From Amphiscolops sp. MND2022 (Eukaryota), in assembly GCA_964187785.1 (NCBI GenBank), contig OZ076413.1:25420001-25484000 (forward strand): DNA of 64,000 nt. Direction: 5' to 3'. Each line of letters opens with the position of its first letter. The first letter of the stretch is position 1. The position numbers and the translations under genes were made by a program. Positions 8,961 through 49,693 of the stretch are shown here, in pieces. The notes beneath the pieces are model-generated. The model did no database searches, had not been told where the DNA came from, and was given only the letters and a program-made list of their open reading frames with translations.

Positions 8961-9443
8961 CACGCCCATACACAGGTTGTTGACTCTAATTCTGCCATTC
9001 CTTTATCTCTAGCGCAGCAGGTTGTATTGCAGCATTTTGAGAGGATGGTAGCTCGAGCTGCCGTAGTAACCAAAACTTTGGAACCACTGATTTTCCAAAC
9101 TTTTGTGCCCAATGCTTTCCTCACCGACGTATCCTTGCACACTGCCATCTTTTTAGAGGATAGCGTGGCCACTATTGGCGAGAGAGACCATCCAGTAGAT
9201 ACAATCCTCCAGAAGTTGTCGTTGCCTTGCGTAGGGGAAGTCCTGTGCCCCAGGTTTAAGGAGTGGTCCAGTGATGGAAATAGCCTGGAATTCATCCTGG
9301 CTACCGTGGTACCCCCTGTGCTGAGCAATAATTCGTTCGGACAATTCAATTTTGAGCGAGAGCCTGTGCAAATTGGTACTAATGTCCGCGTAGTCCTACA
9401 TAACCGCGTGTATGTGTACATACTCAGCGTGGAGGTGGGCTGA
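8757..9443 (+). pseudogene. pol: pol remnant: protease linker fused through two deletions to the extreme pol C-terminus
   Basis: EDSVATIGE (matches right copy ~62720) joins directly to DHPVDTILQKLSLP (right copy ~59550) near 9183. EREPVQ joins to GTNVRVVL (right copy ~58545) near 9372. Confidence 0.8.
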
Positions 9444-9695
9444 AAACATTAAACATTTATTTCTTTGTAAAATCTTCTCCGCGAGAGCCTCAAGCACTCC
9501 TACGTAGTTGAATGCATCTCTGTTAACCTCATATTTTGTTCTTTGTTTGTTTTAGCAAATTTTAGTCAAACTACATGTAGATCGGTCGAGCGCCCTTATG
9601 GAGCTCGTTTTGCTCTATACTGCATATGTTAGTGAGACTTTTGCTCTAACCATCTTAGTATTTTAAGCAATCTGGCGCACACCTTTTTTAGACAT

Positions 9696-12600
9696 ATGAG
9701 CACAGCATGGCATTTTACCCTACGTCCACAGTGCTTTCGTCAAATGCTTAATGGCATCCCAAGGACTCAAGAAGGTGCTCGAGCGCAGTGTGTCAATCAT
9801 GCCCAGTATGTCGAAGAACGCCTAAGAAACGGCATCCCGCCTGTGGAAGTTGCCGGAATAGATGCCGTGCTGGCGCTGGCAGGCATGTCTCTCGCCATAG
9901 TCACCCATGTAGCTGGCTACCGGCGCACTTCCACTTGCCAAAATACCGCATGGGACGGGTACGACTTAACCCGGTAATTTTTTAATGAGCGTTCCACCGC
10001 TGTATATGGACCTATTCAAAGTAATGCTCTCGAGCAAGAGCATCCTTGAGGATGATGCCGCCAATTCTACCACGCCCCAGCAACATCAACCTCTCCAGAT
10101 GGTAAATTATCAACTTCTGGTGTCTCAGGGCTCTTTTGGAGCTATTTAACCGGGGGCCTCTACTGAGTTTAGCAACAAAGACCCTCAGATCAGCAAATAC
10201 CGGTCAAACTACAGAAGTATCACGTCATAGACCCGCCCCATTAATGATATGTGGGGACCAGCGTCAAGCGACTTCAATCTGTAGGCAATTACTCAGAAGC
10301 TTTGAGAAAGCGTACCTTCTAGTACTCATCGAATTAACTTTAGTTACAGAAGCATCGACTTCCTCGCAGCATTGGGCATACCTTGAAAGTGGTAAGTACC
10401 TTTTACCTGTCCGCAAAGCAACAGCACCAACTGACTGAGGAAAATCTGATAGTGAATAGGGTTCATTCAAAGGGTTTCCCTATTCCAGATCAACATAGTC
10501 CCAACGGAATGCATCTCTACGACTGGAGTGCCATTCACTACAAAATTCACAGACGTCAAGAGACAATGATGCGTTCGACAGCGATTGCCACTCCCGAGGG
10601 AGCTGAGATGGGACCATACCCCGATTCTCATAGAAGAACTTTTGTAGGTAGTTTTTGTGTCCCCCTGTTGTCAGGACTGTTGAGGATTTGGTTCCAGGCG
10701 TCGTCTACTGAGCAACCTTGGTTGACACATAACAGTAGCACTCATACTCTGGTGACTGATCTGCCGGGGAGGTGAGCTTTACCTGTCCGAAGATGGAGCT
10801 TCCAGCCACTCGTGAAGGCATCCTTGAACTGATCCACCAACCTCTGGTACCAATACCGACACTAGTTACGTCTTCCTGCGCTGGTTTCCCTGGGACGCCA
10901 CCTTGAGCCCTGCATATGATTTTACAAGCGACGTCTAACGCACCGCAGCCTGCTCTGGGCCCCGTCTTGCACCGTTACCGAACCCGTATCTCGTTTTCCG
11001 GAAACTGGGAGAGCAGGCAGTAATAGTAACGCTGCAAGCCGTAGCTAATTGTCCTGACACTTTATACTTTGTGGAAGCCATTTCACATGTACTACCAGGA
11101 ATGTCTGCATACCTGCAAGCCACGGCGAAGCCTTCGGCTTGCGCACGTCAAGTACCACCAATTGAATCCCTGCCTATGGAAGTACAAGCCACGGAAAACA
11201 CCAGCGAGGCAAAACCGCAACTGGTGGCTGCCACTAGTGACGAAGCAGGACAAAAGAGGTCGCCGCAGGAGGCAACCGCCTCAACCGCAGCAGCCGCAGA
11301 GACGGCCAGACCAAACAGCTGTCCGCCGCCTGGCAAGCAACAGTAATCCGAGCCACCTCAGCCAAACATGTGCAGTGTCGTCATTCCTGTACACCCGACA
11401 GTTGATTAGCGAGGCCCTGTCTTACCACAAATGTGCATGGATGAAGCCAGAGAGACATATGGAACTACGGAAGCCAGCTCTAACGAGAGCTCTGTGCCTT
11501 CGGGCACATCAACGTCTTCAACTGAGCAAGTGGAGACTCCCCCGCGGAACCCATCGAACCCGCTGAAACTCTTCAATAATCCTATCTTCCACCGTGTGAC
11601 GACGTTTCCGGTTCGGTCGTCACCAAACGCATATGGGAGGCCGCCGAGTTCTTTCTTGCCTAGAGGTACATCATAAAGAAACTATGTCCCCCAACGACGA
11701 GGACCAAAAAGCGGTGAACCAATACAACATCGTAGCCAACGTCACCCACGCGCTACGTGCTTATGACGCTGACATGACTGAGCAGGCATGGGAGCAAAGT
11801 GCTCAGGAAAGACTACCACCAACGCCTCACGGTTATTTGACCGCACTGCAGCACAACCTGACGGAGCAATTCCCTTCGAGGTACAGACGGGAAAACATGG
11901 GAGGATAATGCCAGATATGCGAGCACCCGTCATCTCTGAAGCCTCTCCTCAAGAGCGTGCTGCAGCGAGCCCGCTACTGTTTGGTAGTGGACTTCACCTT
12001 CCAAACTGACTTGCCTGTTGACAACCATGATGTCGGATGTAGTGGTGGTGACCATGCCACTTGCCCGCATCCCGAGATGGACGAAATGGCTGTGGCGATA
12101 TTCGCACCTGAGCTTTCGGGCTCTCTAAGAAAGAGCTACCACCACAGCGTGTGATCTTCGCGAACCTTCCAGATCACATGGCTTGGGAAGGATTGCTAGT
12201 GGAGATTAACGCAGCCATCATGATGCAAGATAGCAACCACCCTGAGCGAGCTGGACACCTGGTACAGCTGGTGGCCAAGGCAATGGAGATTGCCATCGAT
12301 ATCCTTCAGGGTCGGTTAGGAGCGTCCGCTCTATTGTGTCGCCGCCCGGCTTGATGTACTTGGGAAGGAATTTCCAAAGATTCATGTACTTGTTGATGGA
12401 AGTCTGCAAGGCCCGCCGCATTAACTTTGCTATCTGTGCGCCGAACTTGCGCGTTGGCGCGGCGACTTTGGGCCAGCAGCTATATTTCATCATGCCTACA
12501 TAGCCGCCATTTCAAGAGTGGTACAGTCCTTTGATTGCTTGGGCCACGCCCAGCTGACGTCAGATGATGCCATTCACTACGACCTTGGAATAACGATGGG

Positions 12601-14294
12601 TCGACTCACCTTTCACCAGCCAGGTAGCCGGAACATGCGAGAGGCTACACTTGCCGAACGAGAGACGGTGCGTCGTCATACCTGGCTTATAAGGAACACC
12701 ACCGAAGTCCACATTCTTTGAGAGCTAACGAAAATGATGAAGCAGATCGGAGATCAGCCAGCAGTACGCTCCGTGCAGCGGACGATTCCGCAAATTTGTT
12801 TCGCTGCTCGAACGGAGCCATTTAAACTCCCAAATGGCTTGAGAAACATCATCCTTTTATACGAAGCTATCAACCTCAAGGTCGACACTGAAGCCCGTGC
12901 CATTACCTATGCGCACTGGTACCAAACCCTATTAGTCGGTCCAACAATGTCGGAAATATCTCGGTATCTATCACTTCCCATTGAAGCCGTTGCCACTAGC
13001 CTTGGCTTAGGCTGGAATCCGGACATCCCCCTGTCTGAGTTTGATCTTACTGACCACCAAGCACTTAAATTGATGGAGACCTTGCCGAAATGACTGTTGA
13101 GGAGTTGTTGTCGCTAGTCTTATCGGTGGGCCCTTCGAAGTCCTCTGGTGTTATTGATTGTCTTGTCTTGTGACCTGATTATGTTCAACACTTATCTGGT
13201 CCTGGCTGAGGGACAACTTTGTAGCCTAATTCGCTGGGGGCACATCCTGTGTAGCCATGACAAGCAGGACTACATTGCGCAGTTCGAGAGGCTGCGTGCC
13301 TATTTGCAGCACTGGCTATACTCATTCCTTATCTATGCGTCAGTTTTTGTCGGAGTCGACCAGGTGCATCCATTGCATGGTCCAGAGTGACAGTTGCCCT
13401 GGAATACTACAGAATTCCTCATGCCGTAGCAGTTCGCTGACCTGACACTTGCCGATATCGATGACCCAATGGTGGTCTTCGCGAGCTAGCACCCGTGTGG
13501 ACCCAACTTACACTTTTAAGCGTATCACCATCCCGAATTGCTATGGGAAAGATCCATTGAGATGGGCGCATGCCCGTTCAGCTATGCGCGCGCCCAATCA
13601 CCTTCAACACCAGTTGCAGCACTTGGATCTAGCTAAGGTTCCAACTTGGATTGAAGGTGGCGCTCAGGTGCGCCAGAGGAATCTGAAGTGGCGTATCATC
13701 CCTACCAAACAGCCCCAGGGCAAGATGAAAATGTCTGTTGATATGTCTCTGCCAATGCAAGATGTCATTAACGCTGTTTTGGGCGCCCAAGCCCCTGCCG
13801 ATTGGGAGGAGCAGTAATTGAAGCTCGAATCTGCCGGGTTCGCTTATTGGAAAAGAGCTTGCGAACTGTGGAGACAACCTGGGTTCTGTACCGAAGTCCA
13901 CTGCCAGAGCCGCTCAGAGACTGAAAGACAGCAGGCGTTGGCGCCTACCAAGGTCATGTCCCTCGACCAACCAAACTCCTTTGCCACGCCATCACTATCT
14001 CAGAAACTGGCTGTCGAGTCAATGCGCCCGCAAGCACCAGTAGTTCCCGAACTTACAAGAGAACATACCGCAGAGTTAACATCCAATGCCGCACTACTGC
14101 AGCCGATTAAAGATTTGGCTCTGACCGAGGAAGTCCCAGACACGGAAACCGTGGTCTCACTCAGTAGAAGAGCCTCTGCCTCCGAGGCAAAAAATCTGCA
14201 AAACAAGGAGAGCTTTGAGGGAAAAGCAGCTAAGGAATATACCAGGCATGGTTCCGTACAAAGAACGGTGTCCTGGAGCGTTCGCGCTCCTTAA
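9696..14294 (+). pseudogene. Large extra ORF2 downstream of pol (env position), unknown function, with SGNH-hydrolase-like domain at ~11960-12560
   Basis: Chain of ORF fragments (9696-9977, 10136-10438, 10383-10775, 11071-11346, 11431-11676, 12151-12354, 12734-13093, 13148-13390, 13449-13817, 13818-14294) whose peptides match in order the minus-strand fragments at 53508-58229. Starts MSTAWHFTL after a ~250-bp spacer behind the pol stop. Confidence 0.75.
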
Positions 14295-15017
14295 GATTGG
14301 AACTGATGTCTCACAAACTCCAGAACTGGTGCCAAACTTTATGCCAATTGCATAGGTGCTAGCAATGCTACCAAAGTGCAACTCTTTGTTAATTCAGTTA
14401 TATACTTTGTTATTTTGTTGTTCCTTTTTTTCTGCAGTGGGTGTACGGCCATTGAGTGCCCCTGCCCCACCTGCTTACATTCAAGAGAGAAAAGAAACCA
14501 AGATACGAAAAAGTACTGATACTTTTGTTCTCCACCGTTCGCGGCGTCTCTGAGTCGCCATAGCTTGAAACACAGCATTAGTTTCAGTTGAGTTCTAGTT
14601 TTCTGTCCTGTTAATTCTATCGACTGTAGTGTTTGTCGCAGAGACCAAGCGCTCCCGGAAAAGTTTTGAAATGCCTCAAACCTGCAAACAATGCTCGAGA
14701 ACAAAACTGGATAAAAAAATTTGCGGGCGTTTGCTGCAAAAGAAGTTTTAGACATGAAGAACTTTTAAAAACGACTTTGAAACTGCTGAAAATCCTAGCT
14801 TTCGAGCTGGTGCTAAAAAATTGACCTTAATTTTGTAAACTAGGCAGTGAAAACGTTACGTAGGTAAAAAAAATTGCCAGAAACAAGCCGAAAGGCAAGG
14901 ATTCGTCCTTGTCTCCTCATGTTTGAACTACGGCTCTCAGCAGACAAAGCAAACTAGTTCCAGGACGAGGCCCTGTGACGCTTACCGGGGACGACGAGCC
15001 AGAAGCCCAGGGAGTGA

Positions 15018-15727
15018 TGTAACTTCCGAAATCACAATTTTCAAAAACAAAATTCGTTTTAATCTGACGTGGCCGCTTGAGCATGTTTGGAGCAAAATAC
15101 CTGCCTGAATCAGTCCCAAACGACAAAGCTAGCCGCCTGCGCGAGAATGCGAGAAACTAAACCAGCAAAAAGAGCAGTTATTTGCGTGTATTTTCAAGGT
15201 AATTGGTAGTTTTTGAGAAGATTTCACTTCTTTTCTAGTAGAAACCTGTAAATCCGAATGTCTGCCTAAAATCCCTGTTGGTGCCCTGTGGAGTTACTAG
15301 CTCGAGCGATGGGTACTCCCTTTAGGTCTTGCCCATTTTCAAAATGGACAAAACGAACTCGAGCTGTGTTATTTCATGTATTTGTTTGCGTAGTTGAGAT
15401 TTCATACGCTCGAGAGCTGTCTTATAACATTTGTGCTTCTTTGTTATTGGCAATTGATCAAATTTCCCAGATCTATGGTTTAAATTCAAATAAATCTTTT
15501 GGCCCCTCTTTAAAAGGATAATTAGCCAGTGGTCTTTGGTACAAGAATTATGCAGGTTATTTTTAGCAGTTAAAGGCCGGGACCAGGCCAGAGAGCATCC
15601 TATAAGACGGTTCCCCCTCCTTGGGACTGGAGGCAAATTGAGCTAGGGATGAAGATCTAAGTCCCGGACCACATTCAGAGTTTGTCCTCTTCCAGGTTTC
15701 CGTTAAGCGCTAGCGCTTGTCGTTACC
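15018..15727 (+). repeat. 3' LTR copy 2
   Basis: TGTAAC start preceded by purine-rich CAGGGAGTGA (PPT-like); ends GCTTGTCGTTACC. Confidence 0.85.
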
Positions 15728-16273
15728 AAGGGTTCAAGCTTTGCATCGAAAATGGAAAATTTCATTTCTAGAGACAACTATGTAGGACTATTCCGTTCTC
15801 TTTTGCTTGAAAAAGTGTAAAATGTTTTATCTGCTGGGCAGAAATGTCCTGAAGTTTGAAATTCTTTCAGAGACTGGCCTGCTAGAGTTGTTTGTATTAC
15901 AAGCAATGATGACCATTTATATTGTTATAAATGATTTTTCAAAATTTAAAAGACTAAAAACGATTGCGAAAACTTGAATTATCACGCAATTGTAAACCAG
16001 TCTCAAAAAGAATGTCGATTCTTGAAGGTATTCATTTGAGGTGGCTTTTTCGGTCGGACGACATGAAAGACGCCTTGGAAAAACTACACTGCGCAGCTGC
16101 TGGTGATGATACAAAACAAAATATTCTTCCTCACACAATTTGCACCAAGTCTGGTGAATTTGAAACTCAAACATTGTTTTGTTAGTGTGCAAACACGCCT
16201 CAAATTTGAATCGAGTATCAATCTTATTGACACTTTATTTGACGCAAAAAATAACGTTGCCGATAATATAAAC

Positions 16274-18183
16274 CAGGGGTGCCTATAATTTATTTGCCCT
16301 CCATTTTTCGAAATTTTTCAGCTGCAATCCATTATTTGGAATAGAAAAGCGGCGGTCTTCCATTTCCCCAATAACGGCTAGTAATGGTAAAATCATTTCC
16401 CGTGTTTTTATGTGTTGACTCCTGATTGGTTAATTCGAAAGGTAACATTACAAATGTTGATCGTAAAATCACAACAACTCAAACTAGGAATTTAAATCGA
16501 ATATTCGAATAAACTAGAGACTGATTGCGAGCGAATACCGCTTTTTCCGCGGTCTGTCCAAACAGGTGACGGGGAATCCCTTTTTGCGAAGATGGGTTGA
16601 TAGAAGTGATGGTGGTAGCAAAAATCATATTAAACTAGCGTATAACTAATGTATGACGAAATTTTCGTTTCTGTCTTAACTTTCGTTCAGCGCCTTCGGA
16701 GTCACCTCTCCGTTCCAAAATGCATTGTTGACTATCGAAAAATATTTATTTTAGATTCATGGGCAGCGGCTTAAGTGTAAGTAAATGTAGCAGAGCTAAA
16801 GAAGCGTTCAACCAGTTTTGACGTCGGTAGCAGGAAGTGTAACGTCTGGTAAACAGATTTAACGACTCTTTAACCGTTCTCCTGCGTTTCAATGGATTTG
16901 TAGCAGAATCGCCGTCTTCTTGAGAATCGTCTATTGTAGTAACTTCAACATTACAATTCTTCTTGAGCATTTCCATAGATTCGCACTCAGACTTCGTAAG
17001 TGTGCTCTCTTCGCTGTTTTGTATTTTAACGATTTCATCTATTTTTTGAGACTGAATGAAAAATGCTGGCGTTTTTGCTGCAGTACGGATCAAACTTTCG
17101 AAACTCACTTATCGCCTAATCGAAGATAAATTGGATATCGGAATGTCGATTATCATTTTTCTGCAAAGATTTTGTTTTGCTGTCCAACTATTGCAGTTCA
17201 TCAAGTAAACTTGTCACTCCGTGCTTTTCGCTAGGTGAGGCAATCAGATCGGCGATCGTTACTTAATCGTAAACTGTAGATGACGCGATGATAGGCTGTA
17301 TTTGAAGAAAACGAGATAACATGGCATTGGTACGAGATCACCTTATACCGTTATTCCGGATAGGGCATCGATCAGTCAATCGTCCCAATTGTCTTGCCAA
17401 CTTGAGTGTTGTGAGTTTTCTCGACAGAGAGTTTGAAACAAAAGCGAAGTTTTCTGCTAACTGTGATACTATGATGTTTTCGGTTTTCTTGGTGACTTTT
17501 TTCATATAACATTTTAGCGTAAAACCTGTGATTGAATCCAATCTGATAAATTCATGGGTAAGGGGCGTTTCTACAATCTTGGATGGTTTCATTCATAAAC
17601 ATCCATTTTAGTCATGAATAGGCTCTTTGCTTTTATTTACTAATGATACAAGGCTGTGATAAATCGTTTTAATTCGAATAGCTAGGGTGTGCTGATGTAA
17701 TGTGATTGAATGAACTTGAGTATCCCTTGCTGGCTTTCTGAACAAGTGCCTTGTTGCATATGCACCTCCACAGATCTTGTTCACCGTTCACGTTTGTGAA
17801 AGAACGACGTCTAACTGCTTTTGGTGTCATGTCAGCCTTGGCGTATTCCATTGAAACATTGTAGTGAAAGAATAGCAACTATAGTGTTTGAGAGGTGTAT
17901 ATAAAAAAAACATGGGACGTGGGTAAAGCGGGAGGCAGATTTTCTCTGATTGGCTGATCATTATTCAAATGCAACGTTCTGTGTGTTACATGTAGAGCAC
18001 AAGTAAAATGCTTATTTGCACAATAAATGCGTTCGTAAACAATTCGTCACAAAAAGTGCCATTGATGCAGTTAATGGCATCCTCTTTCCTCTATTCTTCT
18101 TTTTTCGTAAATGCCTGCAATCCATTAATGGAAAGACAAAATGGTCAAATAATGGTTGGGTGAATTGATTTTAGGCACCCCTG
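16274..18183 (-). mobile_element. Defective hAT DNA transposon, left copy
   Basis: TIRs CAGGGGTGCCTATAAT at 16274 and ATTTTAGGCACCCCTG ending 18183. Flanks ATATAAAC / ATTTAAAC match 7/8 as an 8-bp TSD. Confidence 0.9.
16676..17830 (-). pseudogene. hAT transposase, internally deleted and frameshifted
   Basis: BED-finger-like WRCICNKALVQKASKGYSSSFNHITSAHP, then IVETPLTHEFIRLDSI...SQLAENFAFV (region of the first catalytic Asp, degenerate), FESLI..KIQ and NPLKRRR. The C-terminal dimerisation motif is clearest in the right copy. Confidence 0.8.
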
Positions 18184-18375
18184 ATTTAAACTATTGTAGT
18201 TTGTAGTGTAACGTCATTTTAGCAGCGTCCAAACTAGAGCTGGGATAATGCCTAGGTTGTTTTGACAGGTGACCATGGTCTTACTACAACACCAGACGTC
18301 AGTTTCTGACCGCCTGCCCCTTTGGAGAGATGTATGGAATGAAATGATATCACAGTTGGTAAAATGAACAATCGG

Positions 18376-21300
18376 AGTAGTAAATGTACGTGGCATTATT
18401 TGTGGCGGGGGTTGAGTGATTAACAAACACGGTCATAACCGGGATTCCAAAATGAGGTCATGATTGCGACACGATGACGTAACCGAACGTCAAAAAATCT
18501 GGCTCACGCAGAGCCGACTAGAAACCGAAACAAAATTACACAACCTTGAAAACACGAGCCTGAAAGTTTTTTTGTTGTTATTTAGGGCAATGAAAGGACA
18601 ATTCCTTACCTTTGCATGCTGAAAAGTAATAGGCAAAATGGAAGGAGTAGTTTGTTAATAATGAAAAGGAAATGGGATCAACAAAAAAGTCTTTCACCTA
18701 CCAACGTTGAAATGAATGTGATTCTACTTACTTTCTCTTCATGCTAGTGACCTTTATTGATGCGTGATTTGTATGGATAAAAATTCCCTGAAGTTACCCT
18801 CATATGCGTAATGGATAACAGTCTTTATCGCTCCAACCATCAATCACCAGAAGTATCTCTACCTTTAGATTACGCCATATTTTTACACCGAGTTACATGA
18901 AAATGTGATCTAAAAATTGTGAAAAATGCAAAAAATATGATGAAAAAAGGTGGTGAATTGCTAGAAAAAGATGAATATTTCTCATGTTTATATCACTGAA
19001 AGAGTTTTCACAGTGTTGAGTTCTGAAGTACCCGACTGCTTGAGTTTCATCATCAGAAATTCAGAACTGCTGGGATTCAAGTTTCGGTTAAATAGTGTTG
19101 TACCGTGTAATACTTTGAAAAAAGGAGGAGTTTTTGAAAAAAATTTCGCAAAAAAGTCGCAGAGTGCCAAAAAGAGCAAAATCACATCTTCGCTTGCGTT
19201 AAGTCTTCGCAGACAAAGATTTCCAGCCCCAAGCAGACATCGAACCGACGACTGTTTGCTTGGTAAGTGTGCATGGCTACTGGTTTTCAATCTTGGGGTT
19301 TGAAAACTGTAACAAGACGGGAACGTGTAGAATCGGCGCTAAATCTACAGCTCAAAATTATTGATCATACGCCTCCTCCCTCTCAAACGATCCCAAATTA
19401 CTTCGGCTATAACGTCAAAGACTCGAAAAGTTATTGAAACAAATCTTTGTCGGTACATATCGACAAAACTTAATTTCTGAAGTGAAGAAGTTTTTGAAAC
19501 AGTCTCAAAGTGCCGAAAATGTAAGAATGAAGACACTTTGGGCTTTTTAAACTCCAGTTAGTTGCAAAATATCAAAACAATTCAAAGGGGATCATTAAAG
19601 ACGAACAAAAACTTCGAAAAAAAAGTCGCGCAGTGCCGAAATATTTCAAAGGGGGGACCCTACATTCGCGTCCGGTTTTGTATTTTAAGTTTCTACGTTT
19701 TAAAAAGAAAAAGTGGAAGGGGGGGCTTTGCACTATCTTAGATGCGTTTCCGCTTGCCGGTCCTGTAATTTAGTAGTTCTGTAAAAAATGCGCACTGCTT
19801 ATACAATCTCTGATGAAAAACGAGAAAAAAATTGTTACTGTATTAGTCGTGCTTTTTTCCTCTGGAGGACAATGAGCTGACTAAAACCGGACCATTAGCA
19901 AACTTTCTCTTATCAAGAAAAATTTGGAAAAAAATTATTTTTTCGTAGTTGAGAACGTTTTCTTGTAAAGGCCGAGCAGTTCCGACAGCGTTGACAGCTT
20001 TTTGGAAGAAGTGATATTTGAGGTTTAATTCTGTGGATAACTAACTTTGATACAACGAAGGCAAGCAAGTCCTCTCAGGACAAAGTGAAATTTATCATGA
20101 TTACCATTTGGTCTGAAAAAATGTTCCCGAATGTAAAATTGACATCGAGTGTATCGATACTTTGGAAATCTGTACTTCATCTTCAGTTCATTTTTCGTGA
20201 AAATTTTTGTATGGTGAATTGAATTGGAAGTCGAACCTTACGTTGTTGAGCTATTGACAGATATTAAAGTTCACGATTTTGAATTTTTCATATTCGAGTC
20301 TGTTTCGTTTTATCGTTTTGCACAGGTAATGTTCTCTTTCAAAATCAACGATTGTTACAATTTTTGATTGACCTAATAACCAACCAGATATGATGTGATT
20401 AAGAGAGTTGTAAAAATTGTGTTCTCATTCTTCTTTCAGGTAGTTTGGAAAATCTCCAAAAGACTTCCAAAACGAGTCTAGAACTTCATTTGTTGCTAAA
20501 ACAAAATTAGGAATTGTGGGATTGGTGCTTGCCAGCCATAACAATGATGAGATAATAGTGCTGGACCTCACTGTTGTTGCGATGATGAATCAAATTCGTT
20601 TTGGTTCAAGAAAGTAGTTGATTGAACGAGTTATTATAGATGCATGTTCTTCATTGATTAAAAGACCTCCGAGAATCAGACGGTGAGATGAAGTTGTATG
20701 TGAAACAAGACATTGTTGTAGACAATTCAAAAGAACTGGAATCACAATCAAAGCTTCTTGTAATAAAGTGGAAGCTTTTCAAAAACTTTTAAAAGGTTTT
20801 AACAACAAAGTTGTTCATTAGACGCAACCCCTATTTTCCAAGAAAAATAATTGATTGCAGTAAAAAGCTAAAAAACCTGAAACACAGTACATAAAACCTC
20901 AGAAAACAAGCACCCTGCAAAAACCTTCAACCGATGAACAACGTGGTGAACTTGGAATTACCTGCATTGAAACATGCCTAAATTCTACAATACAAGAGAA
21001 GCTAGATATATTTTTGAATCAAGATAAAGTAGCCAGAAACGATTTTGAGAGATTAGAAAAACTGAGTATTGAAAGTTTATCTTTTGAAATGATTAAGTTT
21101 GGAAACTGTTTTGAATTAAGATCTGAAAGTTTGTGTTATACAAAATTATTCGACGCAGGAGATTATGAAGTTAAATGGTTTGAGTCTTTTGTTTTTAACA
21201 GGATAAAATTATCCAAAGGCAGCATGTTTTTCGTTGTTAAAGCAAGTACTGTATACTCACTGTGCTTCTAACTAAACTTGTTGTTTTGTTTGGTCTTTTC

Positions 21301-22554
21301 AATCGGTTTCAAAACTTCTGTTGCGTACACATCCTGATAAACTAATCTTCCAAATAGAGGAAACATTGTTGAAACATTGATTTTGAAAAGAAATCAAAAG
21401 ACGAAACCTTCACATTTGATACCAACTGTAAGATTCCCAGAGTAAAGTATCAGAGATTAGGAAGTTCAGAATTCTATAATAGATTTTACAAATTCACTAA
21501 AGAGCTAACACCCTGAAATTCGTTCAACCGAACAACAATTTGCTGTTTTTGGACTAAGCCAAAAATACTGTTAAATGCTGCAAACATGTGGAAAACCTAC
21601 GATTTAAAAGCTGAAAAATCCGTGCATATTTTTTTGAAAAGTTTTAGAAACAAAAGTAACAGCAACTTAACTTCAAAGAATAAAACTGTTTTTATTGTTT
21701 TACCTTTTGAACTGAAGCATTTATCGAAGGTGGTGGTTTACAATTGAAATTGATTGTTTTGTAAATATGTTCAATCCAAGTAAATATGAAGGAACTGATT
21801 TGAATTTTTTTTGAATAGCACAACAAAGAACACCGTGTAAAAAACAGCAACCTCTTTCTTTTGCTGTACAAGCAGATACCACATAATTTCGACTACAATT
21901 TACATTTTCTCGAAGTTTTGTAACTTTCCATTAGATTTCAAATATGAAACAAAAATTTTTTTAATAAGTTGACCAACCTTAAGAGAATCCAAGATACAGC
22001 AGGGAAGCTTTAATTATGAAGAATGAGATTTGCAATTTTCAAAATCAACCTATATTGCTTTGTTAGACTTCTAAGTTCAACAACTTCAACTTCATGTTAC
22101 TTTCATAAAAGAAAAAAGGGCAAAGCAAAAAAGATTCCTAGGAACATTTACAAAACATAATATCAAACATTCAAATTTTTGATCAAACAAGTCAAGCAGA
22201 AGAACAGAGTGACATTTTCGGAAGTCTGGTGGAAGCTGTTGAGTTTGCTAGAACGGAATTATCAAGAATCGAGGAGGGATTTAAAAAATCACTTTCATTG
22301 GCAGAGAACGCATTCGAAAATCATAACATAATAGCTGCAATCTCACACGATTCTGGAAAGTTTGATTATAGAAAAGTCATTAGACGGTAAAAAGTCATTG
22401 AAATCTGATTTTGTTGGTTCTCCAAAGTTTATCAATCAACTTTCGTTTATACCACACAACCTGTAGCTGTAATGATGCTGACACTTGAAAAAAACATAAC
22501 GAAGCAACATTGATGGTTAAAAAAGGAACGAACAAAAGAGCTAGGAAGAACTCA
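18376..22554 (+). repeat. Long inverted repeat arm M1 (four copies in the window)
   Basis: Homologous to 25500-29262 (-), 38828-42295 (+) and 45360-49508 (-). Carries a ~500-bp segment (18822-19323) shared only with the 45360-49508 arm. Confidence 0.9.
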
Positions 22555-25499
22555 TATTTGTGATAACATTCTTGTGATAACGTTTTGGAAGAAGGTTATA
22601 CAAACGTTACGTAATAGATTCGACACGAAGATGACAGAATTGAACGGAAAAAACACGCAGCGAGAACCTAGTACAATACAACTCCACCGGCACTAGGCTT
22701 TATTGACTGACAAAAATGCAGCGGTCAAAGTGACAAAGCAGTGACTTTTTTTCAGTGACAAAGTAGCCTATTGCACAAATCCTAATTCATTTGCCTTCTT
22801 TCCTTCTAGTGGGAACTGCTGTTATCCAGGTTTGATCCTCAGCATACCCTAAATCTTTAGTAGCATTTTTGCAAAGACTATTTTTTGCAAAGTGACAAAT
22901 TAACAAGAAAACGCATTTTTTCAACATGTGTGCATTCATTCATGGTCATACGTGAATAATGTTTGCATGATTTCAAAACACAAAAGGAGTTGAAAATGAA
23001 CAATCGAACAACAGTCACGATGATTCAATGGTTCAAGAGTTGTTCAAACGGCTGTTGTCTTGGCTCGACCAAAGTCTACAAATTGACGAAAGTTTACAAG
23101 ATTGAATTGATGATGTATAGTATGACGACAGTGATGACGTAGAATCTGAAAGGAATAATAATTGCAGTATTTCGATGAAACCGTTTGAGTTTGAATAACC
23201 TAACTTCCAATACGCTTTAACTATGTTGCTGGTTTTTGTTCTTTTGCTGGTTTTGCCGTTTCAAGCCGGGGTACTATTCCAAACGGTGGAGCAAGCGTTT
23301 TTACAGTCTCTAAAACTTGCAGGCCATTTTTTTAATGGAAGAAATTTTGATTAAAAAGTGTGGTCGGAGTAGACATGCTACGCTAGTCATGTTGGAGGAG
23401 AGAATATTGCACTGAAGACTGCTGCAATATCGCTGAACAGGGGAGGAGTTGAAGGCATCAACAATCACCGTGATATCTGTTCCATAACCCAAGAACGCGC
23501 AACCGGTTACTCCAACCAGACCTTGAATAAAACATTCGCTGCAGGTTTTCTATTGGAAAGTGACATTGACTACGTCTGCACCAGGGCAAAATATTGAAGT
23601 GAATTCGAAAGGCTTTTGTTTTAACTGAATTCATTTCCAAGGGGCTTTCAATCTGTCAAGAGACTGTTCTGGCTTGCCAATCCCACCATCGTTTGAGCTC
23701 AGAAACAACCCTTGAGAAAATGCAGTACGTTTTCATGAGGACTTGGAAATCGTTTGATGTAAAATTTACATGTTTTTTACTACTGTTTAAAATATCCAGT
23801 TCTCTGGATGAAATTTTGGCTTGGACTGATAGCGGTTGCTGTACGGAAACTACTGTAAAATCATCACCAGCGTCCCAACAAAATTTTACTCCAGTGTGGC
23901 ATTCAGGAAATTCTCCTTAGACGTTCCTTCCTCTCTCCATATGAAAGCTGTGAAAAAATATGAACGAGGTATTTTAGAAAACTCTTTCCTAATATTTTTG
24001 CAGAAAAATATCTATTCGTTTATCATTTCGCTATAACTTTTTTGCTCTTACAAAAACATCAAGAAATAAACGTATCAACACCTTTCCAATAGAAACGTTA
24101 TTTAAAAAGAGAATCTATTTTGAGTATTAGGTTCTTCAGAAATCAATATACCTTTTAGATTATAATTTAGTACTCAACTTTCAATGAAGTACTTACTTTT
24201 TTCAAAAAAAATATCGAATAATTAAATAATTGAACCTTTAGTACTACAAATTTTTCAACTTGGTAGCATCAACTTTCCCTATGAATGATTACCATACCTT
24301 GAATTTTTTGAATAAACATGAATAATGAACCAGTCCGTTATGCAAGTGGAAAATTTTGTGAAAGTTTCTAAATTGGTTTGATTTTAAACCCTTGAAGTTC
24401 ATGTTGAAAGCGAAACTGTCTCTTAATCGGAATTGAAATGTTTAGTGCTTTTAGGATTTTGATGAAGCTCATTTCACAGCTTTTGAAAAGACTTTATGTA
24501 GTAGCAAACTAGATCTCTTGAACAATGTGGAGGCGAGGACCATATTAAAGCGAGGAACACTTTGCGAATCTGATTTTTTTCCATTCCTCGAGCATAATTT
24601 GAGATTTTCAAATTCTGTGTTGTTGTTGTTGATGATATGCTTGACGTTAATCAGAGGTTGACAGATCAGTTTCCTCTACCTGATACCATCCACCCGAACG
24701 AAGAATCAGAAACAACACAAATGCCATTTCTTCCGGGAAACCCTGAAAGACGTTGAAAATAACTTTTGGAATAGAACGGGCTGGAGAAGAACTTATTCAA
24801 GGTAGAATGTTTTGAAAAGATCATCTAGCTGTAAAACCAAAAAACTTTCTCCAAATACTAAACCAATCCAAAATAAATGGGGTATCTTTTTGTTAAACAA
24901 AAAGATTTTTATGTTTTAATAATGAACGCTTCCATTCTTTGAAGTTGTGGAATCTCGCGTTCTCCCTTCATGTTACTCTATAACCGTTTTATACAATTCA
25001 AAATGTTTTAAGAGTCGCAAGGAAAAAATCATGACTTTGAGTTTTGGTCGTTCCTTTAATCGAGTTCTTTCGAATGTTGTACCTTTTTTTCCGTTACGAC
25101 TCTCTAACTTCTGTTTTCCGAGGTTCAATCTCCAATTTTTTGTTTCGTTCTGGAACAAAGTTCCTATTCTTGTCCCTCAAAAAAAAAGAAAGACTGGGTA
25201 TTCAAATCCTTTCGTGTTAGCGGTTTCAAAAGATCATAATCGAAGGTTCTCTGATGGTTTGGGTTGAAATGATATTTATTTTAATTTGTGAAATTTAAGA
25301 TGACTGAGAGTGGCAATCAATACTTGAATATTCAAAAACTATTTTGACAATTGAAGAGTCAACCATATTCAAGCTCGTTGAAAGGTAAAAATTTCCTGAG
25401 ATTTTTTTTTCAATTTCGTCAGTTGATATCTGTGAAGTACTGTGTTACAGTAAAAACAGAATGAATCCTCTGTCGCTTCTCGAGTTAAACGGGAATCAC

Positions 25500-28400
25500 T
25501 ACAACTACAGGTTGTGTGGTATAAGCAAAAGTTCAATGATAATTTTTGGAGAACCAACAAAATCAGATTTCAATGACTTCTACTAGCTAATGGCTCTTTA
25601 TATAATCAAGTTTTCCAGAATCGTGTGCGATTGCAGCTATTATGTTATGTTTTTCGAATGCGTTCTCTGCCTATAAAAGTGAATTTTTTAAGCCCTTCTC
25701 GATTCTTGGTATTTCCGTTCTAACAAATTCAAAAGCTTTTACCAAACTTCAGAAAATGTCGCTTGACTTGTTTGATCAAAAACAATGAGTGTTTGATATA
25801 TTGATTTGTAAAAGTTCCTCTGAAACGTTTTTTTGCTTTGCTATTTTTTTATGAAAGGACCATGAAGTTGAAGTTATTGAAGTTAGAAGTCAAACAAATC
25901 AAAGACGTTTGTTTTGAAAAATACAAAGCTCTTTCATTGTAAATAAAGCTTCCATACTGTTTCTTGGTTTCTGTAAACGTCGATCAACCTAATCAAAAAA
26001 GATTTTGTTTCATATTTGAAATCTAATGGAAAATTACAAAACCTCCAGAAAATTGAACGCTGTAGTCGAAATGCTGTGATATCTGCTTCTTGAGCAAAGG
26101 AAAGAGGTTGCTGCTTCGGAAACGGTGTTCTTTGTTTCGTTATTCAAAAAGTAGTCAAATCAGTTCGTTTTTATTTTATTGGTATGAACATATTTTAAAA
26201 AGAATCAATTTTAATTGGTAAACCACCACCTTCGACTGAATTTATTCAGTTCAAAAGGTAAAACAATAAAAACAGTTTCATTCTTTGAAGTTAAGTTGCT
26301 GTTACTTTTGATTCTAAAACGTTTCAAAAAAAAACATTGCAAAGATTATTCAGATTTTAAATCTAAGGTTTAACACCTGTTTGCAGTATTTAATAGTATG
26401 TTTGGCTTAGTCCAAAAACAACAAAGTGTTGTTCGATTGAACGAGTTTTAGGGTGTTGGCTCTTTAGTGATTCTGTAAAATGTGCTATATACTTCATATT
26501 CTGTGAATTTCATATTCTCTGACCCTTTTCTCTGAGAATCAAATTTGGTATCAAATTTGAAGGATTCATTATTTGATTTTTTTCAAAATAATTGTTTCAA
26601 CACTTTTTCCTCTATCTGGAAGAATAGTTTATCAAGATGTGTACGCAACAGAAGTTTTGAAGTCAATTGAAAAGACCAAACAAACAACAAGTATATTGAG
26701 AAGCACAGTGACTATACCGTACATGTTTTAACAACGAAAAACATGCTGCGTTTGGGATATTTTATCCTGTTATTAAAAAAAGATTCAAACCAGTTAAGGT
26801 CATAAACTCCTGCGTCGAACAATTTTGTAGAAGAGAAACTTTCAGATGTTAATTCAAAACTGTTTACTAACTTAATCATTTCAAAAGATAAACTTTCAAT
26901 ACTCAGTTTTTCTAATGCTTCAAAATCGTTTCTGTTTAATTTATCATGATTCAAAAATATATCTACCTTCTCTTGTGTTGTAGATTTTATGCATGTTTCT
27001 ATGCAAGTAATTCCAAGTTCACCACGTTGTTCATCGGTTGAACATTTTTGCAGGGTGTTTAATTTCTGAGGTTTTGTAAACTGTGTTATCGGTTTAGTAA
27101 GGTTTTACCGCAATCAATTAATTTTCTGCGAAAATAGGGATTGCGTCTAATGAACAACTTTGTTGTTATTTTTTCGAATATTTTTTGAAAATCTTTCACT
27201 TTGTTAGATGAACCGTTGATAGTTTTTCCAGATTTTTTGATTTGTCAGTGGTCTACGTCTTGTTTCACACACAACTTAATCTCACCGTCTGATTCTCGAA
27301 GGTCTTTTATTCAATGAAGATCATGCATCTATAATGACTCCTTCAATCAATAACTTTCTTGAATCATAACGAGTTTGATTCATCATTGCATCAAAAGTGA
27401 GGTCAAGCACTATTACATTAGAGTGCATAGGCAAGCTTAATTTGCTCAAAGCGCAATTTGTGCTTTCAATACCTCGGATTCCACGACCAAACCTTTAACC
27501 GTGGAAAATTGACAAATTACGTCATAAGTCCCGGATTCCACAAACAAGCATTCCACAGACAAGCAGCGGAATTTTCGTGTCGCGGATTCCACGACAACCA
27601 TTAAAATAGCTTGCCTATGCACTGTAATGTATCTCATCACTGTTATGGCTGGCAATCAACAATTCCACCTCTCCTAATTTTGTATCTGCACTAAATGAAG
27701 TTCTAGACTCGTTTTGGAAATCTTTTGAAAATTTTCCAAACTACCTGAAAGGTGGATTAAAACAAAACTTTTACAACTCACTTAATCACATTCTATCTGA
27801 TTGGTTATTAGGTCAATCAAAATTGTAACAATCGTTGATTTCGAAAGAGAACATTACCTGCGCAAAACGTCGAGAACGGAACAGTCTCAAATATGGAAGT
27901 TTCAAAATCATGGACTTTGATACATCTCAATAGCTCAACAACGAAAGGGTCAACTTCCAGTTCAATCCGTCACACAATAATTTTTACGAGTATTGAACCG
28001 GAGATGAAGTAAAGATTTCCAAAGAAATGTTACAGCCGATGTCAATTTTACATTCGGGAACATTTATTTCAGACCAAATGGTAATCATGATAAGTTTCAC
28101 TTTATCCTGAGAGGAGTTGCTTTCTTTTGGTTGTATCCAAGTTAGTTTCACTTATCTATGAATCTCGATAACAGAATTAAACTTCGAATATCACTTCCAA
28201 AAAGTTGTCAACGCTGTCGGAACTGCTCGGACTTCATAGAAAAACGTTATCAGCTACGAAAAAATATTTTTTCGAAATTTTTCTTGAAAAGAGAAAGTTT
28301 GCTAATGTTCCGGTTTTGTCGGCTGATTGTCCTCCAGAGGAGAAAAGCACGACTATAACAGTGACAAATTTTTCTCTTCTTCTGTCAAAGAATGAATGCG

Positions 28401-29262
28401 TAGTGCACACTTTTTATAGAACTACTAAACTACAGGACCGGCAAGCGAAAACGCATCTAAAATAGGGCAAAGGCTCCCCTTTCACTTATTCTTTGTTTAA
28501 ACGTAACAACGTAAAAAACAATCCGGATGAGACTGTAAGGTCCGCTCTTCGAAATTTTTCGGCACTGCGCGACTTTTTTTTAAAGTTTTCTTTCGTCTCC
28601 AATGGTCCCCTTTCATTTTTTTGTTATTTCGCAACAAGCTGTTGTTTAAAAAGCCCAAAGTGTCTTCCTTTTTAAATGTTTCGGCACTTTGAGACTGTTT
28701 CAAAAATTTTTTCATTTCAGCAATTAAGTTTTGTCGATATATACCCACAAATATTTTTCTCGAAACTTTTCAAAACTTTTACGTTTTAGTCGAAGTAATT
28801 TGGGTTTTATTGAGGGGGAAGAGGCGTATGATCAATCTTTTTGAGCTTCAGGATTAGCGCCGATTTTACACGCTGTTATCCATTACGCAAATGAAGGTAA
28901 CTTCAGGGATTTTTTATCCATAGAAATCACGCATCATTAAAGGTCACTAACATGAAGTAGAAGCACATTCTTTTCAACGTTGGTAGATGAAAGCACTTTT
29001 TTTGACCCATTTCCTTTTATCCCGGCCGCAATTTCCAATCCTAACAAACTACTCCTTCTATTTTTCCTATTAGATTCCAGCACGCAAAGGTAAGGAATTT
29101 TCCTTTCATTGCCTGGAATATCAACAAAAAACTTCCAGGCTCGTATTTTCAAGGTTGTGTAATTTTGTTTCGGGTTCTAGTCAGCTCTCTGCGAGTCAGA
29201 ATATTTGACGTTCGGTCTTCGTGTCGCAATCATGACATTTAATGCCACGTACATTTACTACT
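25500..29262 (-). repeat. Long inverted repeat arm M2
   Basis: Reverse complement of M1. Lacks the 500-bp segment, has a ~58-bp deletion after the first 23 terminal bases, and has lost its inner ~80 bp plus adjacent core sequence. Hosts a MITE. Confidence 0.9.
27416..27629. mobile_element. 214-bp MITE with TA TSD (Tc1/mariner-type target)
   Basis: TIRs CATTAGAGTGCATAGGCAAGCT / AGCTTGCCTATGCACTGTAATG with TA on both sides. The empty site CACTATTATCTCATC is present in the paralogous arm at ~47316-47330. Internal GGATTCCAC motifs. Confidence 0.85.
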
Positions 29263-29689
29263 AATCGGTTTTTTCTTGTTTCAAAAATTCAACTAGTGCT
29301 CACGTTCCGCTGCGCCCACCCAAACAGAAACTCCGCCCACCCGTTGGAAAAATCCTACAACCTGGTGCCGCTCCAAGGAAGTTCAAGGAGAATGCCTGCG
29401 GACAAAATCGAAGGCACTAACCAAAAATTCTGGAGTTTCTGGCGGTGGGGCTAAACAGCTTTGTCTTTCAGTATGGGATTGTAGAAATGAAATGTTCATA
29501 ATAAAACAGTGAAATGCGTTGAATAATGCTACCAGCAAAAGTAGGCTTCCCTTACCGCGCATCGTAGAGAGCCTCAGCCGGCTAGTTTATATTACAGTAA
29601 CACCGATTTGAACCGACCGTTTCAGCTAATCAGCTGTAGCCCTGCCATTGACGACATATGCCATGGCCTCTGCTTGACGCAGTTGTGTT

Positions 29690-38627: not shown

Positions 38628-38827
38628 NNNNNNNNNNNNNNNNNNNNNNNNNNNNNNNNNNNNNNNNNNNNNNNNNNNNNNNNNNNNNNNNNNNNNNNNN
38701 NNNNNNNNNNNNNNNNNNNNNNNNNNNNNNNNNNNNNNNNNNNNNNNNNNNNNNNNNNNNNNNNNNNNNNNNNNNNNNNNNNNNNNNNNNNNNNNNNNNN
38801 NNNNNNNNNNNNNNNNNNNNNNNNNNN
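38628..38827. other. Assembly gap (200 N)
   Basis: Run of exactly 200 N, so probably a fixed-size scaffolding spacer. It hides the left terminus of the second Polinton-like copy. Confidence 0.97.
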
Positions 38828-47800: not shown

Positions 47801-49508
47801 TGAGAGAACTTGCTTGCTTGGTTGTATCTAAGTTAGTTTCACTTATCTATGAATCTTGACAACAGAATTGAACTTCGAATATCACTTTCCAAAAGCTGTC
47901 AACGCTGTCGGAACTGCTCGGGATTCACAGTAAAACGTTCTCAACTACGGAAAAGATAGTTCTTTTTTACAAAATTTTTCTCGATAAAAGACAGTTTGCT
48001 AATGGTCCAGTTTAAGTCGGCTCATTGTCCTCCACAGCGAAAAGCACGACTTATACAGTGACATTTTTTTCCTCTTTTTTCGTCAGAGAATGTACGCGTA
48101 GTGCACACTTTTTACAGAACTACTGAACTACAGGACCGGCAAGCGAAAACGCATCTAAGGTAGTGCAAAGGCTCTCCCTTTCACTTATTCTTTGTTTAAA
48201 CGTAATAACGTAAAATACAATACCGGACGAGACTGTAGGCTCCCCCTTTGAATTTTTTCGGCACTGAGCGTCTTTTCCGTCATCCGTCTGTAATAATCAC
48301 CTTTCAATTTTTTTGATATTTTGCAGCAAACTGGAGTTTAAAAAGCCCAAAATATCTTACATTTTCCGGCAATTTGAGACTGTTTCAAATGGTTTTTCAT
48401 TTCAGAAGGTTGGTTTTGTCGATATATACCAACAAATATTTGTTTCAATACTTTTCGGAGCTTTGACGTTATAGCCGAAGTAATACTTTTGAGGGAGAGG
48501 AGGCGTACGAACAATTTTTTCGAGCTGTAGATTTAGCGCCGATTTTACACGTTTCCGTCTTGTTACAGTTTTCAAACCCCAAAGATTGGAAACCAGTAGC
48601 CATGCACGCTTTCCAAGCAAACAATCGTCGGTTCGATGTCTGCTTAGGGCTGGAAATCTTTGTCTGCAAACCCTTAACGTGTGCGAAGACGCCATTTTGC
48701 TCTTTTCGGCACTCTGAGACTTCCTTTCAAAACCTTTTTTTACCAAAACAGCTCCTTGATTCAAAGTATTACACGGTACAACACTATTGAACCAAAACGT
48801 GAATCCCAGCAATTTTGAATTTTTGGCGATGAAACCAAAGCAGTCCGGTACTTCATTAACCAACACTGTGAAAACTCTTTCAGTGATCTATACAAGAGAA
48901 ATAATCTTCTTTTTCTAGCGAATCACCACCTTTTTTCATCAGTTTTTTTGCAATTTTCACATTTTTCAGATCACATTTTCATGTTACTCGGTGTGAAAAT
49001 ATGGCGTAATGTAAAGGTAGAGATACTTCTGGTGATTGATGGTTGGAACGATAAAGACTGTTATCCATTACGCAAACGAAGGTATTTTTGTATCCAAAAA
49101 AATCACGCATCGATGAAGGTCACTAGCATGAAGAGGAAGTAAGTAGAAGCACATTCATTTCAACGTTGATATATGAAAGCACTTTTTATTGATCTCATTT
49201 CCTTTTATCCCAGTTGCAATTTCCATTCTTAACAAACTTCTTCCATTTTCCCTATTACTTTCCTGCATGCAAAGGTAAGGAAGTTCCATTTCATTGCCTG
49301 GAATAACAACAAAAACTTCGAGGCTCGTATTTTTAAGGTTGTGTAATTTTGTTTCGGTTTCTAGTCGGCTCTTTGTGGGTCAGAATTTTTGACGTTCGGT
49401 TACATCATCGTGTCGCAATCATGACGTCGTTTTGGAATCCGCTTTGTGACCATATTTGGTTACTCACTCAACCCCCCGCCACAAATAATGCCACGTACAT
49501 TTACTACT
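38828..49508. mobile_element. Polinton-type long-TIR element, right (inverted) copy
   Basis: Arms 38828-42295 and 45360-49508. The core 42296-45359 is the reverse complement of 22555-25500. The right end ...CATTTACTACT at 49508 is followed by CCGATT (reverse complement of AATCGG). Confidence 0.8.
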
Positions 49509-49693
49509 CCGATTGTTCTTTTTACCGACTGTGATATCAATTCATTCCATATATCTCTCCAAAGGGGTAGGTGGACAGAAACTCATGTCTGGTGTTGAAG
49601 TAAGACCATTGTCACCTGTCAAAACAACCTAGGCATTGTCCCGGCTCTAGTTTGGACGATGCTAAAATGACGTTACACAACAATAGTTTAAAT

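What the first reader, a model, noticed from the sequence alone, without database searches (positions are those of the whole stretch)
18376..29262. 10.9-kb element with Polinton/Maverick-type ends but ~4-kb inverted repeats and no Polinton genes
Seen: AGTAGT...ACTACT termini (23 identical terminal bases), a perfect 6-bp TSD AATCGG, inverted arms of ~4.2 and ~3.8 kb making up about three quarters of the element, and a ~3-kb core. The second copy (38828-49508) has the same plan. Established: Polintons have AG/AGT-repeat termini, 6-bp TSDs made by a retroviral-type integrase, and TIRs usually of hundreds of bp, and they encode pPolB, integrase, ATPase and capsid. I find none of these motifs here. 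Inference: a non-autonomous panhandle/foldback family mobilised in trans by a Polinton, with ORFs duplicated inside its TIRs as in linear plasmids or viral ITRs. It may be undescribed, and it is a potential source of long hairpin dsRNA.
Basis: partly seen in the sequence, partly recalled or inferred. Interest (0 to 1): 0.85.

Follow-up and report, generated by a model that had tools for sequence, protein, structure and literature searches.

The report
Gene-less foldback transposon with Maverick-type ends
This is an old, decayed copy of a low-copy, non-coding mobile element built as a long inverted repeat; its end sequences and 6-base insertion scars match Maverick/Polinton virus-like transposons, so it was most likely moved by one of them, although none of their genes are present.

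Summary
At 18376-29262 lies a 10,887-bp element with AGTAGT...ACTACT ends and a perfect 6-bp duplication (AATCGG). Its inverted arms are 4.10 and 3.77 kb (86% identical) around a 3.0-kb core. No Pfam domain was found.

Two corrections:
- The "second copy" (38828-49508) is not an independent insertion. It lies inside a roughly 20-kb inverted duplicate of the whole neighbourhood and shares the same flank and hexamer. It is joined to copy 1 only across a 200-N run.
- The ORFs in the arms are not genes. dN/dS is 0.9-1.6, and substitutions between family members show no codon periodicity.

The family is nevertheless real. The same assembly (ENA ERZ25074608) holds relatives on four other contigs. 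One is a complete 8.8-kb copy with about 3-kb inverted arms, homologous ends and a different 6-bp duplication (CCAGTC).

The (AGT)2//(ACT)2 ends with 6-bp duplications are the published signature of vertebrate Mavericks. IS3EU/GingerRoot, the other 6-bp superfamily, ends in TA..TA.

Best reading: a non-coding foldback element integrated in trans by a Maverick/Polinton-type integrase, now inactive. No autonomous partner was found, so mobilisation in trans remains an inference.

The parts
18370..18375 (.). Left copy of the 6-bp target-site duplication AATCGG
   Evidence: identical to 29263-29268
18376..29262 (+). Element copy 1, 10,887 bp, AGTAGT...ACTACT ends
18376..22476 (+). Left arm L1 (4,101 bp). 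It carries two stretches absent from the right arm: 18399-18456 and 18822-19323.
22477..25494 (.). Core, 3,018 bp, with no inverted partner in this copy. In relatives, its part next to the right arm follows an arm in inverted orientation (L005, L008, L009).
25495..29262 (-). Right arm R1 (3,768 bp), 85.8% identical to L1
27416..27629 (.). Nested 214-bp MITE found only in R1. It has 22-nt inverted ends with one mismatch and a TA duplication (27414-15 and 27630-31). L1 shows the unoccupied site.
   Evidence: a 93% identical copy lies at L004 5376-5589
29263..29268 (.). Right copy of the 6-bp target-site duplication AATCGG
20864..21268 (+). Longest ORF of the arm (135 codons stop to stop), mirrored at 26715-27104(-) and 46533-46991(-). 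Not under selection.
38828..49508 (-). Element copy 2, a paralogue of copy 1 in inverted orientation. R2 is 38828-42295, the core 42296-45359, L2 45360-49508. The outer end of R2 is lost in the N run.
49509..49514 (.). CCGATT, the reverse complement of AATCGG: the same target hexamer, copied together with the flank
9375..29191 (.). Left half of the large inverted duplication; its partner is 38830-58550
   Evidence: flanks 87.5% identical
38628..38827 (.). 200-N run. Copies 1 and 2 lie on different contigs of the ENA assembly on either side of it. Not filled.

Best explanation
The window holds one ancient insertion of a non-coding, foldback-shaped DNA transposon. The family is low-copy in an unidentified eukaryote. 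Its members are 9-11 kb long and consist of two 3-4-kb inverted arms around a variable centre. They end in (AGT)2...(ACT)2 and are flanked by 6-bp target-site duplications.

Shown:
- the anatomy of the element;
- two independent 6-bp duplications;
- the shared foldback plan in independent copies;
- the absence of any coding signal;
- that copy 2 in the window is a duplicate of the whole locus.

Inferred:
- Integration was carried out by a retroviral-type integrase of a Maverick/Polinton acting in trans on the matching ends.
- The two arms were near-identical when each copy inserted. The active lineage therefore kept them homogeneous, as expected if one arm is copied from the other during replication.
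- All sampled copies are now inactive. Their arms have diverged 13-22%.
For: Ends and insertion scars:
- Copy 1 has exact 23-nt inverted termini and the AATCGG duplication.
- The independent complete copy L008 4284-13113 reads CCAGTC|AGTAGT... at the left and ...ACT|CCAGTC at the right, at positions homologous to the window's termini. Its arms are about 3 kb and 82-89% identical.
- L005 has a homologous left end, GTGTGT|AGTAGTAG..., and long inverted arms at 74% identity.
- PMC8097293 reports (AGT)2//(ACT)2 end motifs together with perfect 6-bp duplications as the signature of vertebrate Mavericks.
- PMC10045372 gives 6 bp as the characteristic duplication length for Polinton. It gives TA..TA ends for IS3EU/GingerRoot, the other 6-bp group.

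Non-coding nature:
- Pfam scans were negative for 74 element ORFs and 113 ORFs of related loci.
- dN/dS of the arm ORF is 0.9-1.6.
- None of 189 windows shows codon periodicity of substitutions; the smallest p is 0.04.

Arm homogeneity at insertion:
- Within-copy arm distances are 0.13 (window) and 0.15 (L008). Distances between copies are 0.19-0.25.
- L1-R1 identity (0.856) equals L1-L2 identity (0.855), so there has been no conversion between arms since the locus was duplicated.
Against: - No element with these ends that encodes pPolB, integrase or capsid was found. The host assembly could be reached only through called ORFs, about 190 kb in all.
- The arms are three to ten times longer than reported Maverick inverted repeats: 46-1,447 bp in PMC8097293, about 2 kb in bioRxiv 10.1101/2025.02.07.637071.
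- Only two complete copies give a duplication test.
- The terminal 250 bp are no better conserved between copies than the rest of the arms, so there is no visible footprint of a binding site.
- The (AGT)2 motif is documented for vertebrates, but this genome shows no CpG depletion (o/e 0.83-0.93) and is probably not a vertebrate.
- Arm similarity within a copy could also come from gene conversion after insertion.
Confidence: 0.62

Rival explanations
1. It is a foldback non-autonomous element of another DDE superfamily that also makes 6-bp duplications (IS3EU/GingerRoot), or it was moved by an LTR-retrotransposon integrase. Ty3/Gypsy elements are abundant around it.
For: 6-bp duplications are usual for IS3EU/GingerRoot and fall within the 3-6-bp range of LTR elements. 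Ty3/Gypsy copies with an rve integrase are common in this genome.
Against: IS3EU/GingerRoot ends are TA..TA or TG..CA, and LTR and Ginger ends are TG..CA or TGT. The element ends here are AGTAGT...ACTACT in the window (both ends), at the L008 left end and at the L005 left end.
Confidence: 0.1
2. It is a decayed autonomous Maverick/Polinton whose genes have eroded beyond recognition.
For: The ends and duplication are of Maverick type. The vast majority of vertebrate Mavericks are reported as mutationally degraded (PMC8097293).
Against: - The copies differ by only 13-25%, a level at which Pfam still detects polymerase, integrase and protease fragments, yet none appears.
- Substitutions between copies show no codon periodicity, so the sequence was already non-coding while the family diversified.
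- About 72% of the element is an inverted duplication.
Confidence: 0.06
3. It is a local inverted duplication with a chance direct repeat, not a mobile element.
For: The two copies in the window share one flank. The locus also sits in a larger inverted duplication.
Against: Related sequences lie on four other contigs. One is complete, with homologous ends and a different perfect 6-bp duplication. The chance of a 6-bp match at fixed positions is 1 in 4,096 per copy.
Confidence: 0.02

Closest known systems
Maverick/Polinton elements of vertebrates (PMC8097293)
   Same: 5'-(AGT)2//(ACT)2-3' end motif, perfect 6-bp target-site duplication, terminal inverted repeats.
   Different: Those elements are 12.7-24.6 kb with eight core genes and inverted repeats of 46-1,447 bp. 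This element is 8.8-10.9 kb, has no genes and has arms of 3-4 kb. The host shows no vertebrate-type CpG depletion.
Butterfly polintons with about 2-kb terminal inverted repeats (bioRxiv 10.1101/2025.02.07.637071)
   Same: Unusually long inverted repeats at the ends of a Polinton-type insertion.
   Different: Those repeats carry hexon and adenain genes, and the elements are coding. The arms here are twice as long and non-coding.
Drosophila Foldback and Galileo elements (PMC3573991; duplication lengths from my own knowledge)
   Same: Most of the element consists of long inverted arms. Members are structurally variable, and the family is associated with rearrangements.
   Different: Their arms are built of internal tandem repeats, whereas these arms contain none. 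Their duplications are 9 bp (FB) or 7 bp (Galileo), and their ends differ.
Snap-back or hairpin defective genomes of protein-primed replicons (adenovirus defective genomes, hairpin derivatives of yeast linear plasmids; recalled from memory, not tested)
   Same: A palindromic molecule made of one end of the replicon duplicated in inverted orientation, with both arms identical at birth.
   Different: Those are extrachromosomal and derive from coding DNA. Here the copies are integrated and non-coding, and the parent is unknown.
IS3EU/GingerRoot (PMC10045372)
   Same: 6-bp target-site duplications.
   Different: Ends are TA..TA (occasionally TG..CA), not AGT...ACT.

Membership tests
Polinton/Maverick (autonomous) | [quoted passage not shown] | tested here: not met
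   No Pfam hit in 74 element ORFs of at least 50 aa or in ORFs of the related loci.
Polinton/Maverick (autonomous) | Retroviral-type (rve) integrase gene | tested here: not met
   The only rve hits in the fetched loci belong to Ty3/Gypsy pol genes.
Polinton/Maverick (autonomous) | Capsid, packaging ATPase and protease genes | tested here: not met
   No Pfam family. Substitutions between copies show no codon periodicity in any of 189 windows. Capsid proteins may be poorly covered by Pfam, so the periodicity test is the stronger evidence.
Polinton/Maverick (ends) | 6-bp target-site duplication | tested here: met
   AATCGG in the window; CCAGTC at L008 4278-4283 and 13114-13119.
Polinton/Maverick (ends) | (AGT)2//(ACT)2 or (AG)3//(CT)3 end motif (PMC8097293) | tested here: met
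   AGTAGT...ACTACT in the window. AGTAGT at the L008 left end and the L005 left end. The L008 right end differs by one base in the hexamer. The L009 end lacks one AGT.
Polinton/Maverick (ends) | Terminal inverted repeats of tens to about 1,500 bp | tested here: not met
   Arms are 3.8-4.1 kb in the window and about 3 kb in L008.
Non-autonomous derivative of a Polinton/Maverick | An autonomous element in the same genome shares the terminal sequence | not testable with these tools
   The host assembly (ENA ERZ25074608) can be reached only through exact protein look-ups. Scans of the JGI metagenome and viral collections found nothing related.
Non-autonomous derivative of a Polinton/Maverick | Several copies at unrelated loci with different duplications | tested here: met
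   Window, L005, L006, L008 and L009 lie on five contigs. Two complete copies have different duplications.
Drosophila-type Foldback / Galileo | Arms made of internal tandem repeats; 9-bp or 7-bp duplications | tested here: not met
   Tandem Repeats Finder reports only two arrays of about two copies each in the element. The duplication is 6 bp.
IS3EU/GingerRoot | TA..TA (or TG..CA) ends with 6-bp duplications | tested here: not met
   The duplication length fits but the ends do not.

The most novel reading that the evidence does not exclude
The family may be the integrated fossil record of snap-back (palindromic) defective genomes of a Maverick/polintovirus. In this reading, one end of the replicon was copied back on itself during protein-primed replication. 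That would give two identical multi-kb arms in each new molecule, with the ends still fit for integration.

This would explain why arms cluster by copy rather than by side. It would also explain why different copies differ mainly at the centre of the palindrome: the centre of L005 is itself palindromic, and the core of L008 is inverted relative to the window's.
Probability: 0.2. Interest if true: 0.7.

Novelty: new variant of a known kind. Interest (0 to 1): 0.45.

Why it matters
Gene-less elements that use Maverick/Polinton ends are barely documented. A phrase search of about 8.4 million papers found "non-autonomous Polinton" in one paper only, and there it referred to Tlr1.

A family that is almost entirely a multi-kb inverted repeat, yet shows the integrase scar of a virus-like element, bears on three questions:
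- how little sequence such integrases need in cis;
- whether the arms are homogenised during replication;
- how long palindromes survive in a genome.

Here the family is linked to centre rearrangements, tandem duplication and the birth of a 608-bp satellite. The practical weight is limited, because the copies are old, few and inactive, and the host is unidentified.

Tried and rejected
- Repeat-induced point mutation as the cause of the AT-richness: rejected, because transitions about equal transversions.
- Alternative genetic codes hiding long ORFs: rejected, because no reassignment gives a convincing ORF.
- Structured RNAs or tRNAs in the window: none found.
- The arm ORF as a gene:
  - a word-index search found only the window's own copy;
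  - a full HMMER search of 1.84 billion representatives found five short ORFs, all from the same assembly;
  - a profile repeat added only one more, from L005's own contig;
  - dN/dS is about 1.
- The exact terminus in JGI metagenome and viral contigs: no hit. A degenerate pattern gave one 22-nt chance match with no further similarity.
- A third duplication test at L005: its right arm is truncated and the missing end is not on the contig.
- An empty site for the window's insertion: none in the DNA at hand.
- Special conservation of the termini: not seen.
- The 236-252-aa ORFs in L008: they lie in a repeat tract whose self-matches recur at 3-nt offsets, and they have no Pfam family.
- Tandem Repeats Finder misses the 608-bp array because its period limit is 500. 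The repeat finder shows the array.
- Host identity: not resolved.
Full report
**1. What is in the sequence**

None is expected by chance. Copy 1 is bounded by AATCGG on both sides. The hexamers are direct repeats, not inverted ones, so the element boundary is unambiguous and the duplication is exactly 6 bp.

Self-comparison gives a left arm at 18376-22476 and a right arm at 25495-29262. They are 85.8% identical over 3,490 aligned positions. Between them lies a 3,018-bp core.

Three length differences separate the arms:
- 58 bp just inside the left terminus (18399-18456);
- 502 bp at 18822-19323, also only in the left arm;
- a 214-bp insertion in the right arm only (27416-27629).

The last is a nested MITE. 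It has 22-nt inverted ends and a TA duplication. The left arm preserves the unoccupied site, and a 93% identical copy lies on another contig.

The 23 invariant terminal bases are not remarkable in themselves. Six invariant runs of that length or longer occur in the three-way arm alignment.

**2. The second copy is not a second insertion**

Window 9375-29191 is an inverted duplicate of 58550-38830 at 83-87% identity. The flank next to copy 2 is the reverse complement of the flank next to copy 1, hexamer included.

Shared length differences group the four arms as (L1, L2) and (R1, R2). All six pairwise identities nevertheless lie between 0.853 and 0.870. The insertion came first, and the whole locus was duplicated soon afterwards. 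No conversion between arms has occurred since.

Differences are half transitions and half transversions, so this is ordinary neutral decay and not repeat-induced point mutation.

The outer end of copy 2 is lost in the 200-N run. The two copies lie on different contigs of the public assembly, ctg183721 and ctg184053 of ENA ERZ25074608. The latter starts at window 38975. Their adjacency and orientation therefore rest on that join.

**3. Coding capacity**

The longest stop-to-stop ORF in the element is 135 codons. No alternative code lengthens the ORFs convincingly. None of the 74 ORFs of at least 50 aa matches a Pfam family at a meaningful level.

The one ORF mirrored in the arms (20864-21268, 26715-27104, 46533-46991) has protein identities of 68-73% against about 87% DNA identity. 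Its dN/dS values are 0.86-1.61.

Between the window's element and its relatives, mismatches show no three-base periodicity in any of 189 windows of 300 nt. The smallest p is 0.04, against a corrected threshold of 0.0003. The family evolved as non-coding DNA.

**4. The family**

A profile of the arm ORF, run against 1.84 billion representative proteins, returned five short ORFs. All are from the same assembly. Three of them led to new contigs; a fourth locus (L007) turned out to be the window's own copy 2.

- **L008 4284-13113** is a complete 8,830-bp member. Its left end reads CCAGTC|AGTAGTAAAAGTAC.... Its right end is homologous, differs by one base in the terminal hexamer, and is followed by CCAGTC. 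Its arms run about 3 kb inward at 82-89% identity. Its core lies in the opposite orientation to the window's core relative to the arms. Upstream, about 1.86 kb comprising the flank and the first 1.4 kb of the element is tandemly duplicated.
- **L005** has a homologous left end after GTGTGT, inverted arms at 74% identity, a centre that is itself palindromic, and a truncated right arm.
- **L009** has two left arms in tandem, 3% apart.
- **L006** has a partial arm followed by 13 units of a 608-bp tandem repeat built from two arm segments.

Identity to the window's element is 66-82% and is even along the arms.

**5. Arms cluster by copy**

In a 650-bp block present in eight arms, the distances are as follows:

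| Comparison | Distance |
|---|---|
| Arms within the window locus | 0.12-0.13 |
| Arms within L008 | 0.15 |
| Arms within L005 | 0.22 |
| Arms of different copies | 0.19-0.25 |

Left arms of different copies are no closer to each other than to right arms. The arms of each copy were therefore near-identical when it inserted. The active lineage kept them alike. This could happen through a replication mode in which one arm templates the other, or through conversion.

The window argues against continuing conversion after insertion, because L1-R1 identity equals L1-L2 identity.

**6. Which machinery**

PMC8097293 reports that vertebrate Mavericks end in 5'-(AGT)2//(ACT)2-3' or (AG)3//(CT)3 and carry perfect 6-bp duplications. 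It gives inverted repeats of 46-1,447 bp and element sizes of 12.7-24.6 kb.

PMC10045372 lists 6 bp as characteristic of Polinton, 4-5 bp for Ginger and 3-6 bp for LTR elements. It gives 6 bp with TA..TA ends for IS3EU/GingerRoot. Ginger and LTR ends are TG/TGT.

The ends and scars seen here in two independent copies therefore point to a Maverick/Polinton-type integrase. Long inverted repeats have a precedent of about 2 kb in butterfly polintons, but those carry genes.

No polymerase, integrase, protease, ATPase or capsid family was found in the element, in its relatives or in their flanks. The only hits are retrotransposon gag and pol. Mobilisation in trans is thus an inference from the ends alone.

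**7. Host**

The gag-like ORF at 7265-8215 has more than 100 relatives, all from the same assembly, on contigs of up to 1.1 Mb at 84-125x coverage. They belong to a Ty3/Gypsy family with intact members.

A borderline BEL/Pao-type gag domain (DUF1759) hints at an animal; that link is from my own knowledge and was not tested here. CpG is not depleted, with o/e of 0.83-0.93, which argues against a vertebrate. The species was not identified.

**8. Verdict**

The family is real. The Maverick-type signature is supported by literature and by a second, independent duplication.

All sampled copies are old and decayed.

I rate this a new variant of a known kind, of moderate interest.

Noticed in passing
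window 9375-29191 and 38830-58550: A roughly 20-kb inverted duplication at 83-87% identity, with about 9.6 kb between the halves. It contains the element and part of a GC-rich retroelement. The halves lie on different contigs of the ENA assembly and meet only through the 200-N run.
   Followed up: partly
window 27416-27629; L004 5376-5589: A 214-bp MITE with 22-nt inverted ends and a TA duplication (Tc1/mariner-like), inserted in one arm only. The other arms show the empty site. A 93% identical copy lies on another contig.
   Followed up: yes
window 6000-14300 and 54000-62000: GC-rich stretches (about 51% against 38%). One carries a gag-like ORF with a zinc knuckle (7265-8215) that belongs to a Ty3/Gypsy family of more than 100 members. 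Intact relatives carry a 1,400-aa pol (L003 13923-18125). In the window, no pol domain reached Pfam significance.
   Followed up: partly
window 2148-3207, 14658-15729, 37203-37930, 52063-53143: Another dispersed repeat of about 1.1 kb, 72-79% identical between copies. Not classified.
   Followed up: no
L006 11558-19383: Thirteen tandem units of 608 bp built from two arm segments of the family (window 21394-21899 and 19259-19326). Some units about 3.04 kb (five units) apart are identical over 300 nt. This looks like a satellite born from the element.
   Followed up: partly
L008 3054-3571, 4775-4927, 12128-12718: A repeat tract inside the arms of the L008 copy, with self-matches at 3-nt offsets (apparently a trinucleotide repeat). 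It creates spurious ORFs of 236-252 aa and sits where the window's left-arm-only 502-bp segment lies.
   Followed up: partly
L008 1977-4555; L009 7606-16065: Local tandem duplications involving one end of the element. In L008 the flank and the first 1.4 kb are repeated at 99% identity. In L009 two whole left arms lie about 4.36 kb apart and differ by 3%.
   Followed up: partly
window 18822-19323 and 48552-49057: A 502-bp segment present in the left arms only (L1, L2), and also in the left arms of L005 and L009. It has no obvious inverted ends or duplication. The L008 right arm lacks a larger stretch with different bounds. It is unclear whether this asymmetry is ancestral or reflects repeated deletion.
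   Followed up: partly
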